64,000 nt of DNA, from NCBI GenBank assembly GCA_000388065.2, contig KB932204.1. One strand, written 5' to 3'. This document shows, one piece after another, positions 15,788-27,649 of this stretch. The stretch comes from Fonticula alba ATCC 38817. Lineage: Eukaryota; Protista; Nucleariida. The position numbers and the translations under genes were made by a program. The notes under the pieces are model-generated. The model was not told the origin of the DNA, made no database searches, and was given only the letters and a program-made list of their open reading frames with translations. Within the stretch, counting starts at the first letter, position 1. Each line of letters begins with the position of its first letter.

Positions 15788-16432
15788 ATGAACTTCTCCA
15801 CCCCAGGAGCGTCATCAGAGTCCCCGGCCGAATGGTCTCAACCGCCACCTCCAGCCTACCAGGCGCCCCCCTATGAGATGGCGCCATACCCCTCAAACAG
15901 TGGCGAGGTGTCCAAGGGCCCTCCCTCGGATGCCGCTCAAGCCGCGCATGGTTCCTACCATCAGGCACAGCATTCGCCTGGACCTGCGGCTGGCGGGCCT
16001 GATTACTCCACCGGCGATACCCCATCCTTGCAATCCCATCTTCCCTATGGCCAGCTTCAATATCCTCCGGCCGCCGGTTCTCCAGGCTACTCCTCGGGCT
16101 CGCCCGCCGTGGGCTATCCCACCGGCTCGGGTGCGCCTGGGTATCCTCCCGGTTCCGGGACGCCGGGGTACCCTCCTGGCCCAGGCGCACCGCCATATCC
16201 GCCGACCGGTGCCCCGGCCTATCCAACCCTCACCACCGTGACCACGGTGCACACGACAAATCCCGCCCTGCTGGGGGTTCACCAATCGCCCGATCATAAT
16301 GGCAACCTCTGGGTGCCGGAGACGGTACCCTTTTCGGACTTCGCGGCCTACTTGCCCTACTATGAACTGGTACGTCCGCCCGGAAGTGGGGCCATTCCCT
16401 CTGCACTCGTGCTCCCTCCCTCCCCGATGGTT

Positions 16433-16465
<33 letters not shown>

Positions 16466-23245: not shown

Positions 23246-25963
23246 ACGGCGAATGGTCTGTCTCATACCCTCAAGAATGAAGCGAGCTCGCCTCGGTGGC
23301 CATGCTTTCGTTCGTCTGTGCCCCGGCAAGGGGGGGGNNNNNNNNNNNGGGGGGGGGGGGGGGGCTGGGGCCCCTCGGGCATGAGCTTGACCCGGCAAAA
23401 TGACCCAAAGGGGGGTGGGTCTCTGGCGAAATGGGATCTCCATGCGGGGAGCGAAGCATGTGTCCTCCCTATTCACAACGAGTGGACAGACCGCAGGGCA
23501 CCGGCATGGACGTCAGTCCCTGGGATCCGAGGATCGGAGCGAACTCTTTCGGTGCGCTTGTCGCCCTGAGGGCAAAGTATCGGTGCTGCTTGAGTCCATC
23601 CCATGTCGACTTGCTCGAGTCTTACCCCGGTTCCACGGCCTGCGTGTTTGGATTGCCTCTCATGTTGCCCTTCTGCCGCTGATGGAACTCGATTGACAGG
23701 GTGCCTGGCTGTCCGGTGCACTTCCTCAAGATGATGTTTATTGGGTAGGGCTGAAGCTGAGTGCACCGGGCCCATGGACATGTTCCAACCCAATCGATTG
23801 TCACGATGGGAAGCAACAATCCAGGCTTGGGACCTTGCGAAGGAGCGCCCAGGTCGGTGTGTCCGGTAGGCCCCTTACTTTCGGGGCCGAACGGGACACC
23901 GCCTGGATCCGACTGACTTGCGGGCGGGGAGGGGCTTCCTCTCGACGGGTCCCTTTCTCTTGAGCTCACCGAGGGCGATTCCAGCGAAAGGATGTCATCA
24001 AGCTGACATCTTGGGGTCCTCGTGGATGGAGAGTGCTGTGGCCTGGTAGGATGGTAAATGTACAGCCGATTGGACTGGCCCGTGGCCAAGTCGCTGTTTG
24101 ACGCCCTCCTCCCCCCCCTCCTCCCCCGTGCACTCCTACTGCCTGGCTCTGGAAGGGCATTCGGTGCCACATTTTCATGGTGGATATACTGGCGCTTGAT
24201 ATGGATGAGCACCCTCCTAAGAGGGGTGAGATGGGCGACAATCTCCCAAGGACCTTCGACCGCGACCAGACAATTGATGTCGGGGCAGTATGCCGGTGAA
24301 TAGACCAACAGGCGAAGGCATGTGGGTCGGGAAGAAAGCGCCGAACTTTGTTCTCGGCAGAGGATGGAGGGTATCAACGATCGTGGGTGGCACTATGGAC
24401 GCGGTTTCTAGGGATCCATGCCGCACGGTTGCCATGGGTGCCGGTGTTTGGCCGAGAGAGCGTCACTTCAAGCCCCTTCTTGCGACTAAGGACCTTTTTT
24501 GTCGAAGCCAGATCGACTGGAGGTCAAGCAACCGTTACCCAAAAGCGAGAGGGTACACAGGAGAAGATATCCGGGGGGGGGGGGGGGCTGGCGAGAAAAA
24601 AGAAAGCCCCTAGCACAGCCGGCCCTAGGGAGCTGGTGATCATGGCGCCTGGCAGAAATAGTCATCAGACCAGGAGCGAAGGGTGAATAGGGACGGTCGG
24701 GGCATTGGAAGGGGGCCATGCCGAGAGCTCAAGAGGACCAGAGTCCCAATGGCTAATGAATCGAGTGTCTTTCGGCGCGTGCCGGGATCTTAGGGGAAGG
24801 CCCGTTGGGCAAGCGCACGACAGGAGCCGGGACACGACAAGCTTCCTCAGATTGGGCCGTCTAACATGCCCTCAAGCACGGCCGAATGATCGAGTGTTCG
24901 CGATTATCAGTGTGTCTGACTTTTGTTCCTCGGGTTTGTGCGTGTACAATATTATCTCTCTCTCTCTCTCTCTCTCTCCCTCGCTCCCTTTCTGTGTGTG
25001 GGTGGGTGAATGTGCCATGCGTGTGGATCCCAGATGAGGATCAAGGTGCCGACCTGGATCATTTATTCCGGCCATGGCGACTCATTCTCGAGTCCCAGAA
25101 GAAGAGGAGAGCTGACGCGAGAAGGCCGCTTGAAGGGGGGGGGAGAGAGATATCCTGGCAATATTGGGTGCCTTGCGCCACGGGTGGGATGGCCTCCCCA
25201 GCCCGAGCCACATATCTGCCAGGTGATAGCCTCCCTCCTCCAAGTCGATCGAGGTGGAGGCCTCTCAGGCCCGACAGCCCCCCAGGCCTCGTGGCGGAGG
25301 GTGCCCACCGGCTCGAGGCAAGTCCCAACAAGCAGACACCAGGACGCCACCGGCCGGGATGCCAACGTGAAGTTGGGATAGGGCTGGAGAGGGCTCCATT
25401 AGCGCTCCTTCTGATAAAGCAGCATAAATGGCCATGGCGATCCTTTTCCCAGCAGCCCCGCGACCGGTCGCTCGGGCGTCCATCTGCGCCTCAGCGAGGG
25501 AGGTGTTTCTTGCCCGAAATGAGGCGGTCGCCCGTGGTCACAAAGGACGGTGCCCGGGGGAACCATCTGTCGCTTGCCCTATTCAGTCTCGCCACCTGCC
25601 CCTCTCGGTGAGCCAGATGTTTGTCTATTCTTGACTTGTGCGTATGTGTTACTGTGTTCATTTTTATCAGACGCATGGGAGCCGGACTTATCTGTTAGAC
25701 CCGGATGCAGGTGCCTTTCTGGTGCGATGGATCTATACAATCACTGAATGCCGCCCGCCTCGAGGTGGGTGTTGGCGTGTGATGGGAAAAATAAAAAAAA
25801 ATAGAAAACAAACATCTTTATAAGCGCCATGCCTGCCAGGGTCCGCTTTGTGGGGTGAAGCACCATTTCTCGGCTCACCATTCCATGCTCGTTCTCCTCA
25901 TCCTGTCTCCCTTTGGTGAACACCTGTATCCTCCTCTCTCCTTGCCCTCACAGGCCATCATCA

Positions 25964-27649
25964 ATGGACAGCTCAGATTCGGCCCCCCTGCTGCCACCGG
26001 CTCATGATCAGCCGGCCGGCATGTCGTCCTCCTCATCCACCTCGTCATTGCTGTCGACGGCGGCGGCGCCGCCCGCCTACCAGCCAGTACCGGCGCCTGC
26101 CTTCAGCTCGGCCGGGGGATCGAATACGGCTCCCGGCGCCGATAAAGCCGGCCTTGCCTCTGCCACAAATGACCCCAACTACCCCCCTCCAAGCTCTACC
26201 TCCGGCTATCCGCCTGCAACCTTCGGGGGCTATCCTCCCGCCCCGTCTGGCAGCCATAACCTACCCAGCTATGGGTCGACTCAGGGCTCCTCAAGCGGAG
26301 GACTGCCCTATCCCCCGGCCGGTGGGTCCCAGTATCCCCCGGCCGGCGGCCCACAATACCCCCCGGCCGGCGGCCCACAATACCCCCCGGCCGGCGGGCC
26401 GCAGTATCCCCCGGCCGGCGGGCCGCAGTATCCCCCGGCTGGTGGTCCACAATACCCCCCGGCCGGAGGTCCCGAGCAACCTTCGACGATTGTCGTAACC
26501 GATCCTGCTATGTTTGGTGTCGAATATTCCACCAAGCTGAACCGTCATATTTGGGTGCCCGAGAAGGTCCCTCACTTGAATCTGTCCTCCTATCTTCCCT
26601 ACTTCCAGGATGTTCGTTCCCCGCTGGCTATTCCCTCCCTTCACTTTCGGCAGCTACCCCCCCCCCCTCCCCTGCACACGCACACATCCGCCCAGTGACC
26701 TTTGCCCCTTCACTTGAGCACGATTCCATCCTGTTATCCTAACCTCCCTTCCGCTCCGCCCATGCGCACGTAGCCGATCCCGGTGCCGGCCGCCATGGGC
26801 CCAGTTCGTAGGTATGCCACTATCTACGTACGTGGACTCAGACCATATGTCCTTTCTCTTTGCGAGCCCTGTCCTGATACTTCGCCAGGGGGCTGACCCC
26901 GACCCCGGCTCCCCCCCCCCCCTCTTCCCTCCTTTTCTCGATGTATCCTCCCTTCTAGATCACCATTTCCCTGATCACTGGGTCAGTTATTTTGGTCCTT
27001 GGACTTAGTGCGTCAAGCGGACCCCTCCGCGCTCCCGAATTGCCTCGCTCGCCTGAGTGGGCTCTTTGTCAAGGCCCCAAACCAATGTCTGACACGGATT
27101 CTCCTCCCCCCCCTCCCCCTTTCTGTGCCCGTCTTCGTGTGAACGCGTCCTCTATCAGTCCAAGACCCGATCGGCCTTGAGGCCGTCATTTTCGGCTCTT
27201 GTTCCCTCTTTATTTGTCTGATTTTGGCTCTTGTACGTCCGGACCTCTTTTTTCGTCGCCTGGCGGGAGGCCTTTCTTTTCGTGTGTACCCTGTAGTGTA
27301 TGTTCCCCCGGAGGCCCGTCTCTGACCGTCTTCCTTACCTTCCCTTCCTTTCGGGGTGCGCCCTCTCCGACAGGTGTTCTTCATGAAGAAGCGCAAGGCC
27401 GAGGCTCTGCTCAGGGAGCAGGTGTCTTTCCAGGCGCAGGCATTGGAGTTTATCTCCTCCGGCCGGCCGCCACCGATCCCCAGGGTGGCGGTGTGCAAGT
27501 ATTGCCAGCCGATGAAGGTGAATCGCCACTCTTCGATCGCGATCTGCAGCAAGCCGCTCCACATGCTGGTTCCTCCGTATCTGGCGTGTGTTGACAACCT
27601 GGGCCCGATTTACAACTGCCTTGTGATGGACCTTCTGCGGAAGCTGTGA
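25964..27649 (+). CDS. Pro/Tyr/Gly-rich 2-TM CxxC protein, paralogue 3 (exons 25964-26611, 26774-26827, 26959-27007, 27159-27232, 27374-27649)
   Basis: PPAY, 7x YPPAGGxQ/E repeat, SYLPYFQ, two TM segments, VCKYC...CSKPLHMLVPPYLAC. The 49-nt and 74-nt exons are the same length as in paralogues 1 and 2. Confidence 0.85.
26309..26476 (+). repeat. Coding tandem repeat, 7 x 24 nt (YPPAGG[PS][QE])
   Basis: Unit tat/tac-ccc-ccg-gcc-ggc-ggc-cca-caa with mostly synonymous variation. Confidence 0.9.

What the first reader, a model, noticed from the sequence alone, without database searches (positions are those of the whole stretch)
15788..27649. Unrecognised three-gene family: PY-rich N-terminus, TM hairpin and a conserved CxxC-x13/14-C-xx-P-x-H-x3-P-xx-LAC domain
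Seen: three tandem same-strand paralogues (15788-17356, 19972-21229, 25964-27649) with divergent sequence but the same 5-exon plan (phases 0,0,1,0; internal exons 57/57/54, 49/49/49, 74/74/74 nt). They share YLPY[YF] before intron 1, two TM helices, exactly 30 residues from the last exon start to a conserved Gly, and VCK[FY]C...C-[ED/S]-[RK]-P-[PL]-H...VPP.LAC. I cannot match this to a named family. Known: PPxY/LPxY plus TM architecture marks Nedd4/Rsp5 ubiquitin-ligase adaptors (Ndfip/Bsd2, LITAF, Rcr1), and PPYP...YP runs bind ALG-2 (annexin A7/A11, ALIX). Inference: a lineage-specific family of membrane-tethered E3/ESCRT adaptors with a new Zn-binding (or palmitoylated) Cys/His module, possibly acting in phagolysosomal sorting or membrane repair.
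Basis: partly seen in the sequence, partly recalled or inferred. Interest (0 to 1): 0.78.

Follow-up and report, generated by a model that had tools for sequence, protein, structure and literature searches.

The report
Fonticula-only hairpin membrane proteins, four-Cys domain
The three genes are real, expressed members of a family of at least six small two-helix membrane proteins, found so far only in the amoeba Fonticula alba, that share a conserved four-cysteine (probably zinc-binding) domain resembling no known family; their role as ubiquitin-ligase adaptors is plausible but unproven.

Summary
Observation confirmed. The window is Fonticula alba (KB932204.1). The three 5-exon models are open, have GT..AG introns in phases 0,0,1,0, and equal the NCBI proteins H696_03206, _03208 and _03210. 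The exception is the start of _03208. Spliced cDNA contigs show all four introns of gene 2 removed exactly as predicted. The assembly gap (23338-23348) lies in a poly-G run in the spacer between genes 2 and 3, outside every model.

Corrections:
- The family has at least six members plus one probable relic, all in F. alba.
- The His is missing in 2 of 7 copies. Four Cys (CKxC, C, C), a Gly, a Pro and a PP are invariant.
- The Pro of 'YLPY' is not conserved (YLSYY, YREYY, YRDYF).
- One member has no P/Y-rich tail.
- PPxY occurs once per tail, no more than composition predicts. YPP repeats are strongly enriched.

No relatives were found in Pfam, PDB sequences, 1.84 billion representative proteins, two metagenome scans or the PDB, viral and ESM-Atlas fold searches. 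AlphaFold2 models the core confidently (pLDDT 84): a helical hairpin, a long helix, a knuckle with beta-hairpin, and a C-terminal helix.

Best reading: an N-in/C-in membrane hairpin with a cytosolic, probably zinc-binding mini-domain and a variable proline/tyrosine docking tail. The adaptor function is inference. It is an orphan family of moderate interest.

The parts
15788..17356 (+). Gene 1 (H696_03206, 347 aa). Exons 15788-16369, 16514-16570, 16685-16733, 16850-16923, 17075-17356.
   Evidence: The spliced ORF is open with GT..AG introns and is identical to P0005. cDNA contigs cover 15746-16137. The introns were not covered by reads.
19972..21229 (+). Gene 2 (H696_03208). Exons 19972-20346, 20431-20487, 20572-20620, 20694-20767, 20942-21229; 280 aa from ATG 19972. 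The annotation starts at ATG 19849 (321 aa).
   Evidence: All four introns are skipped exactly in cDNA contigs of two runs. A TATAAG hexamer at 19854 lies 5 nt downstream of the annotated ATG, which favours 19972 as the start; this is inference.
25964..27649 (+). Gene 3 (H696_03210, 366 aa). Exons 25964-26611, 26774-26827, 26959-27007, 27159-27232, 27374-27649.
   Evidence: The spliced ORF is identical to P0001. No read evidence was obtained.
17195..17290 (+). Four-Cys module of gene 1 (CKFC-x13-C-x4-H-x8-C).
   Evidence: Motif scan and alignments A1-A3. AF2 predicts a knuckle plus beta-hairpin here.
21065..21160 (+). Four-Cys module of gene 2.
27494..27589 (+). Four-Cys module of gene 3.
16259..16369 (+). 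Conserved juxtamembrane block at the end of exon 1 of gene 1 (NPALLGV ... LWVPETVP ... YLPYYEL). The equivalent in gene 3 is 26486-26611; gene 2 has a degenerate version at about 20290-20346.
   Evidence: tblastn cross-matches between paralogues and the alignment. The same block is present in H696_01016 and the L003 minus-strand copy.
16514..16923 (+). Transmembrane hairpin of gene 1, encoded by exons 2-4. The equivalents are 20431-20767 in gene 2 and 26774-27232 in gene 3.
   Evidence: Kyte-Doolittle 19-mer peaks of 1.8-2.8. Basic residues flank both outer ends and the short loop is acidic or neutral. AF2 helices span residues 19-45 and 50-97 of model m1f4ea72215dc.
26309..26473 (+). 24-nt tandem repeat, 6.9 copies, encoding the octapeptide GGPQYPPA in the tail of gene 3.
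   Evidence: TRF and the translation.
16105..16180 (+). 27-nt tandem repeat, 2.7 copies, encoding the GxGxPGYPP repeats in the tail of gene 1.
   Evidence: TRF.

Best explanation
The three genes belong to an old, Fonticula-restricted family of small integral membrane proteins, with at least six intact members and one probable relic.

The conserved core has three parts:
- A juxtamembrane block: NPxLLGV, about 8 residues, IWVPExVP, about 7 residues, then Y-x-x-Y-[YF]-[EQD].
- A two-helix hairpin. Basic residues flank both outer ends and the loop is short and acidic or neutral, so both termini face the cytosol.
- An extension of helix 2 into a long cytosolic helix, followed by a mini-domain of about 45 residues with four invariant cysteines (CKxC, 12-13 residues, C, 13 residues, C) and a C-terminal helix.

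Most likely, the four Cys hold one zinc ion in a knuckle-plus-beta-hairpin fold. A His five residues after the third Cys, present in 5 of 7 copies, may assist. This fold would be the family's constant interaction surface at the membrane.

The N-terminal tail is disordered, variable and expands by tandem repeats (GYPP or QYPP units with one PPxY). Where present, it is a docking region for proline-recognising partners such as the WW domains of the single Rsp5-type ligase or a penta-EF-hand protein. That would make most members membrane-tethered adaptors.

Shown: the genes, the splicing of gene 2, the paralogy, the conserved residues and the absence of detectable relatives. Inferred: topology, zinc binding and the adaptor role.
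For: - Gene models and paralogy. The same 57/49/74-nt internal exons occur in H696_06253, and 57/49/71 nt in H696_01016.
- Expression and splicing.
- Restriction to F. alba: a profile search of 1.84e9 representatives gave 6 true hits, all F. alba. A 6-sequence profile word search and two metagenome pattern scans found nothing more.
- No known family: Pfam, PDB sequences, Foldseek PDB, VIA-align wide with best Z 2.4, ESM Atlas and BFVD.
- Fold: the AF2 model has pLDDT 83.6 and pTM 0.68 from only six sequences, with strands after the CxxC and before the third Cys.
- Invariant G, P, CKxC, C, PP and C across seven copies that are only 28-42% identical.
- Charge distribution favours N-in/C-in, and there is no N-terminal hydrophobic signal.
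- YPP is enriched 4-14-fold over shuffles, and PxYPx(3-6)YP is enriched.
- F. alba has one RSP5-subfamily HECT ligase (PMC5913265).
Against: - Zinc binding rests on pattern and prediction only. I could not inspect model coordinates for Cys geometry. The second Cys pair is 13 residues apart, which is unusual for a zinc ribbon.
- PPxY frequency is no higher than composition predicts.
- H696_01016 lacks the P/Y-rich tail altogether.
- No partner, localisation or phenotype is known.
- The module-only AF2 model is of moderate quality (pLDDT 75.9, with the five models ranging 55-76).
- Absence from other nucleariids may reflect sparse sampling and fast divergence.
Confidence: 0.45

Rival explanations
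1. The P/Y/G/Q-rich tails are low-complexity self-association regions of the annexin A7/A11 or CYSTM-protein type. They would cluster the proteins or form membrane-bound condensates rather than recruit a ubiquitin ligase. The Cys module would still be a structural zinc site.
For: YPP repeats, not PPxY, are the enriched element. The repeats expand as DNA tandem repeats. Tail length and sequence vary freely between paralogues, and one paralogue lacks the tail.
Against: A PPAY[QD] motif sits at a similar N-proximal position in three members (residues 21, 36 and 22), which looks like a retained short linear motif. There is no direct evidence for self-association.
Confidence: 0.2
2. The conserved cysteines are lipid-modified (S-palmitoylated) or redox-active rather than zinc ligands. 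They would tether the C-terminal region back to the membrane.
For: The proteins are membrane-bound and the Cys are cytosolic by the predicted topology.
Against: The invariant Cys lie about 40-70 residues beyond the end of helix 2, in a CxxC knuckle followed by predicted beta-strands. Cys close to or inside the helices are not conserved. Four Cys invariant with fixed spacing across copies 28-42% identical is typical of a metal site.
Confidence: 0.1
3. Both termini are extracellular or lumenal. The four Cys would form two disulfides, and the P/Y/G-rich tail would be a matrix-like, possibly hydroxyproline-modified, surface domain used in aggregation or stalk formation.
For: F. alba builds an extracellular stalk matrix (general knowledge). 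P/G/Y repeats recall structural wall proteins.
Against: There is no signal peptide. Clusters of 3-5 basic residues sit on the outer flanks of both helices and the loop is acidic or neutral, which gives N-in/C-in by the positive-inside rule. Translocating a 125-240-residue N-terminus without a signal peptide is unusual.
Confidence: 0.08
4. The module is a diverged copy of the ribosomal bL36 zinc ribbon (C-x2-C-x12-C-x4-H, a C3H site) captured by a membrane protein.
For: bL36 chains are the only zinc proteins among the top PDB sequence matches (E 0.6-4) and the top Foldseek rows for the module (E 5-10). Five of seven copies have C-x2-C-x12/13-C-x4-H. E. coli bL36, read from L002, has C-x2-C-x12-C-x5-H.
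Against: None of these scores is significant. hhalign against E. coli bL36 gives probability 0.9%. The Pfam Ribosomal_L36 model does not hit at E<=10. His is missing in two copies, while a fourth Cys that bL36 lacks is invariant.
Confidence: 0.05

Closest known systems
LITAF/SIMPLE and CDIP1 (LITAF domain, PF10601)
   Same: A proline-rich N-terminus with PY motifs, a hydrophobic membrane anchor and a zinc-binding Cys-rich element in one small endosomal adaptor (PMC5095921, PMC5142333). This is the nearest analogue in overall logic.
   Different: In LITAF the zinc ribbon is split: a CxxC lies before, and an HxCxxC after, a 22-residue monotopic hydrophobic stretch. Here there is no Cys pair before the hydrophobic region, there are two full helices with a loop, and all four Cys follow the hairpin by about 40 residues. 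No Pfam hit.
Ndfip1/2 and yeast Bsd2; Sna3 (PY-motif membrane adaptors or substrates of Nedd4/Rsp5)
   Same: Small polytopic membrane proteins with cytosolic PPxY. Sna3 is also a two-helix hairpin with a PPAY motif (own knowledge).
   Different: Ndfip and Bsd2 have three helices and no Cys module. Sna3 carries its PY motif C-terminally and belongs to the PMP3 family. No sequence or profile similarity was found.
ALG-2 (PDCD6) targets with type-1 motifs: ALIX, PLSCR3, annexin A7/A11
   Same: Tails built of xYPP repeats. PxYPx(n)YP-like patterns are enriched in four of the five tails. Motif definitions are in PMC4346919 and PMC3397542.
   Different: The defined motif has n = 4, whereas here n is 5-6. 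No strict PPYPx4YP and no PxPGF motif is present. Binding is untested.
Ribosomal protein bL36 zinc ribbon
   Same: C-x2-C, a basic beta-hairpin, C and then H at +5 are present in 5 of 7 copies. bL36 gives the best, though non-significant, zinc-protein match by sequence and by Foldseek.
   Different: Statistically unsupported. The family has an extra invariant Cys and a C-terminal helix, and His is dispensable.
CYSTM tail-anchored proteins and dispanins (IFITM/PRRT)
   Same: P/Y/Q-rich cytosolic N-termini joined to a short membrane anchor with conserved Cys. IFITM3 carries a PPxY motif for NEDD4 (own knowledge).
   Different: In those families the Cys lie inside or beside the membrane segment and there is no soluble Cys domain. 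No Pfam hit to either family.

Membership tests
LITAF/SIMPLE-like domain (PF10601) | A CxxC knuckle before, and an (H)xCxxC knuckle after, a hydrophobic stretch of about 22 residues; a match to the Pfam model. | tested here: not met
   No conserved Cys precedes the hydrophobic hairpin. hmmscan at E<=10 gives no zf-LITAF-like hit for any of six members.
Ndfip/Bsd2 family | Three transmembrane helices after an N-terminal PY region; a match to the family profile. | tested here: not met
   Only two hydrophobic helices and no Pfam hit.
PY-motif adaptors of Nedd4/Rsp5 ligases (functional class) | A PPxY or LPxY motif exposed to the cytosol and conserved. | tested here: inconclusive
   There is one PPxY in each of five full-length tails, three of them as PPAY[QD] near the N-terminus. 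The count equals the chance expectation (0.6-0.75, P about 0.5 each). H696_01016 has none. The Pro of 'YLPY' is not conserved.
PY-motif adaptors of Nedd4/Rsp5 ligases (functional class) | Physical binding to WW domains and ligase-dependent sorting. | not testable with these tools
   The only relevant information is that F. alba has one RSP5-subfamily HECT gene (PMC5913265).
ALG-2-binding motif type 1 or type 2 | PPYPXnYP or PXYPXnYP with n = 4 (type 1), or PXPGF (type 2). | tested here: not met
   No strict type-1 and no type-2 motif is present. Related patterns have spacers of 5-6 residues. Definitions are from PMC3397542 and PMC4346919.
bL36 zinc ribbon (PF00444) | A C-x2-C-x12-C-x4-H zinc site and a significant profile match. 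| tested here: not met
   The pattern is present in 5 of 7 copies. However, PDB hits have E 0.6-4, hhalign probability is 0.9%, there is no Pfam hit and Foldseek gives E 5-10.
Zinc-binding Cys4 mini-domain (generic) | Four invariant ligands with fixed spacing, a knuckle plus beta-hairpin, and a cytosolic location. | tested here: met
   CKxC, C and C are invariant in seven copies. Predicted strands flank the ligands. Cytosolic location follows from the positive-inside rule. Metal content itself cannot be tested here.
CYSTM (PF12734) / dispanin CD225 (PF04505) | Conserved Cys within or next to the membrane segment; a match to the family profile. | tested here: not met
   No Pfam hit. Cys in the helices are not conserved.

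The most novel reading that the evidence does not exclude
The roughly 45-residue CKxC...C...C module is a new zinc-binding fold. Together with the conserved juxtamembrane Tyr block, it would define a Fonticula-specific class of hairpin membrane adaptors. Their repeat-expanding P/Y tails would recruit the single Rsp5-type ligase and/or a Ca2+-dependent PEF protein to endolysosomal or plasma membranes. This would be an independent invention of the LITAF/Ndfip solution in the sister lineage of fungi.
Probability: 0.15. Interest if true: 0.6.

Novelty: new variant of a known kind. Interest (0 to 1): 0.35.

Why it matters
Fonticula alba is the only genome-sequenced aggregative amoeba on the fungal side of the opisthokonts, and about a third of its genes have no relatives. 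This family is a clean example: several copies, expressed, with conserved introns and a compact Cys domain that AlphaFold models confidently but that matches nothing solved.

If the domain binds zinc and the tails bind Rsp5 or ALG-2-type proteins, it would show a third independent assembly of the same design: a proline/tyrosine tail, a membrane anchor and a zinc module. The other two are LITAF and Ndfip/Bsd2. It would also add a new small metal-binding fold.

If not, it remains an ordinary lineage-specific family. Nothing here opens a long-standing question, so the interest is moderate.

Tried and rejected
- Pfam on each exon 1, each last exon and six full-length members at E<=10 gave only sub-threshold noise: DUF3040, a holin family and Propep_M14.
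- The word-index search with exon 1 of gene 3 found only the protein itself plus low-complexity C2-domain hits. The search with its C-terminal half found only itself.
- In the exhaustive profile search, two extra hits (P0010, P0011) are internally repetitive proteins matching short CxxC stretches. I rejected them as spurious.
- The PDB profile search returned Na/K-ATPase helices (a transmembrane artefact) and bL36, all with E>0.5. The bL36 lead failed on hhalign.
- Foldseek PDB on both models, VIA-align wide, BFVD and the ESM-Atlas searches by shape and by features gave only helical-hairpin look-alikes or nothing.
Two 3-sequence alignments ran and found no relative.
- A literature search for the six locus tags found nothing.
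- Long ORFs in the spacers and the 662-aa upstream ORF gave no Pfam hits.
- LITAF, Ndfip, CYSTM and dispanin membership was considered and rejected (see the membership tests).
- I sent no typed, hand-joined spliced sequence to any search tool. Exons were searched by reference, and full-length searches used the database records P0001, P0005 and P0006, which equal the spliced models. Joining was done only inside local scripts, for translation and motif counts.

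
Full report
**Identity of the window and the models**

The window is GC-rich eukaryotic DNA with short introns. The word search with exon 1 of the third gene returned a 366-aa protein, H696_03210 of Fonticula alba, at 100% identity. The contig is KB932204.1 of GCA_000388065.2.

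I rebuilt the three models from the sequence:
- gene 1: 15788-16369, 16514-16570, 16685-16733, 16850-16923, 17075-17356
- gene 2: 19972-20346, 20431-20487, 20572-20620, 20694-20767, 20942-21229
- gene 3: 25964-26611, 26774-26827, 26959-27007, 27159-27232, 27374-27649

All introns are GT..AG, the phases are 0,0,1,0, and there are no internal stops. The products equal the database proteins P0005 (H696_03206, 347 aa) and P0001. P0006 (H696_03208) is the same protein as my gene 2 with 41 extra N-terminal residues from an upstream in-frame ATG at 19849.

Exons were searched by reference, and full-length work used these database ids. Joining was done only in local scripts.

**The gap**

The N run at 23338-23348 sits inside a G homopolymer in the 4.7-kb spacer between genes 2 and 3. 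It lies about 2.1 kb after the stop of gene 2 and 2.6 kb before the start of gene 3. No gene is called there, and no family relic is detectable by tblastn. Continuity across the gap therefore does not affect the finding; only the spacer length is uncertain.

**Is the shared motif more than chance?**

The pattern CK[FY]C-x13-C-x2-P-x-H-x3-PP-x-LAC occurs three times in all six frames of 64 kb, and only in the three last exons. The last exons are 34-36% identical, and the conserved Gly is residue 30 in each.

**Expression**

Four small runs from 2012 hold spliced contigs. Two of them skip exactly 20347-20430, 20488-20571, 20621-20693 and 20768-20941 (GT..AG). One 320-nt contig joins all five exons of gene 2. 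Contigs also cover 15746-16137, the 5'UTR and exon 1 of gene 1.

**The family is larger than three**

A profile of the three last exons was searched against 1.84 billion representative proteins. It gave eight hits at E<=1e-3:
- the three window proteins
- three short proteins at E 1e-15 to 1e-16
- two internally repetitive proteins that I reject as spurious

The three short proteins are, or cluster with, F. alba records:
- H696_06253: 394 aa, with the full architecture
- H696_01016: annotated as partial
- H696_06265: cut off by an assembly gap

Scaffold KB932238.1 also carries an unannotated copy on the other strand. Its exon 1 is at L003:11111-10806 and its last exon ends near L003:9712. The internal exons could not be resolved, and its last exon looks shortened, so it may be a relic.

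H696_06253 has exons of 720/57/49/74/285 nt, and H696_01016 has 57/49/71/288 nt. The exon plan is therefore family-wide. I found the missing first exon of H696_01016 upstream, at L004:5552-5830.

Pairwise identity of the seven modules is 28-42% with no close pairs. This is an old radiation, not a recent tandem burst.

**What is conserved**

- Across the seven modules the invariant residues are a Gly, a Pro, C-K-x-C, a third Cys, P-P and a fourth Cys.
It is absent from the L003 minus-strand copy.
- Upstream of the hairpin there is a second conserved block: NPxLLGV, then IWVPExVP, then Y-x-x-Y-[YF]-[EQD].
Elsewhere it reads YLSYY, YREYY or YRDYF, so it is not a conserved LPxY motif.

**The tails**

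The N-terminal regions are 21-27% Pro, 6-11% Tyr and 6-16% Gly. They are built of xYPP units. Gene 3 has a 24-nt DNA repeat in 6.9 copies and gene 1 a 27-nt repeat.

I compared motif counts with composition-preserving shuffles:
- YPP is strongly enriched: observed 3-10 against 0.7 expected.
- PxYPx(3-6)YP is also enriched.
- Strict PPxY occurs exactly once per tail against 0.6-0.75 expected, P about 0.5 each.

Three members keep PPAY[QD] at residues 21, 36 and 22, which hints at a real motif. H696_01016 has a 93-residue tail with no PPxY and no YPP. The tail is an accessory to the core.

**Topology and fold**

Each protein has two hydrophobic helices joined by 5-8 residues. Three to five basic residues sit on both outer flanks, the loop is acidic or neutral, and there is no signal peptide. 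The positive-inside rule therefore places both termini in the cytosol.

AlphaFold2 on six sequences (hairpin plus module) gave pLDDT 83.6 and pTM 0.68. The model has helices at 19-45 and 50-97, strands at 113-116 and 124-127, and a helix at 147-161. The module alone gave pLDDT 75.9 with the same elements. I could not read the coordinates, so the Cys geometry is unchecked.

**Comparison with known families**

- Pfam: nothing at E<=10 beyond noise.
- PDB sequences: best E 0.55. These were membrane helices of P-type ATPases and the zinc ribbon of bL36.
- bL36 shares the C-x2-C-x12-C-x4/5-H pattern and also tops the Foldseek list for the module (E 5-10). However, hhalign gives 0.9% probability and the Pfam L36 model does not hit. 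This is a resemblance of pattern, not membership.
- VIA-align against 48,161 chains: best Z 2.4.
- BFVD and ESM Atlas: nothing.
- A 6-sequence profile word search and two metagenome scans found no relative outside F. alba.
- No paper mentions the locus tags.

**Mechanism**

The best-supported reading is a cytosol-facing, probably zinc-stabilised mini-domain held at a membrane by a helical hairpin. Most members add a disordered P/Y tail that can dock proline-recognition modules. F. alba has one RSP5-subfamily WW-HECT ligase (PMC5913265), so a partner exists.

LITAF shows the same logic, with a PY-rich tail, a membrane anchor and a zinc site (PMC5095921, PMC5142333), but its arrangement of Cys and hydrophobic segment differs. 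The ALG-2 motif definitions (PMC3397542, PMC4346919) are not met strictly.

My estimates:
- a real, orphan, functional family: about 0.9
- zinc binding: about 0.55
- ligase or PEF adaptor function: about 0.3

**Verdict**

This is a lineage-restricted family with an unmatched small Cys domain. It is analogous to known PY-tail membrane adaptors but is not a member of any of those families. Interest is moderate.

Noticed in passing
window 19849-19971: The annotated start of H696_03208 (ATG 19849) lies 5 nt upstream of a TATAAG hexamer at 19854. The 41 extra annotated residues are probably not translated.
   Followed up: partly
window 23174-23245 (-) and 23330-23365: A tRNA-Pro(AGG) gene lies in the spacer between genes 2 and 3. 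About 90 nt away, the assembly gap interrupts a long G homopolymer.
   Followed up: yes
window 17616-18217: cDNA contigs from all four runs lie between genes 1 and 2, where no gene is annotated. They could be a long 3'UTR of gene 1 or an unannotated transcript. ORFs there have no Pfam hit.
   Followed up: partly
L003:9712-11111 (-), scaffold KB932238.1: An unannotated seventh family copy. It has a PPPAY tail, the NPALLGV...IWAPERVP...YREYYE block and a last exon with the four Cys but no R-P-x-H. The internal exons were not resolved, so it may be a pseudogene.
   Followed up: partly
L004:5552-5830 (+), scaffold KB932201.1: The missing first exon of the 'partial' model H696_01016. It encodes 93 residues, is not P/Y-rich and ends YRDYFEM before a GT donor. 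It overlaps a 127-aa gene called on the opposite strand (L004:5278-5661), which is probably spurious.
   Followed up: partly
L005:5079-5883, scaffold KB932243.1: An assembly gap removes the 5' part of H696_06265, so its 113-aa model is a truncation, not a short family member.
   Followed up: yes
window 19677-19819: A (GT)n-type microsatellite of about 140 nt lies immediately upstream of the gene 2 promoter. Introns of gene 1 hold a C28 homopolymer (16433-16460) and a (CTT)13 run (16759-16797).
   Followed up: no
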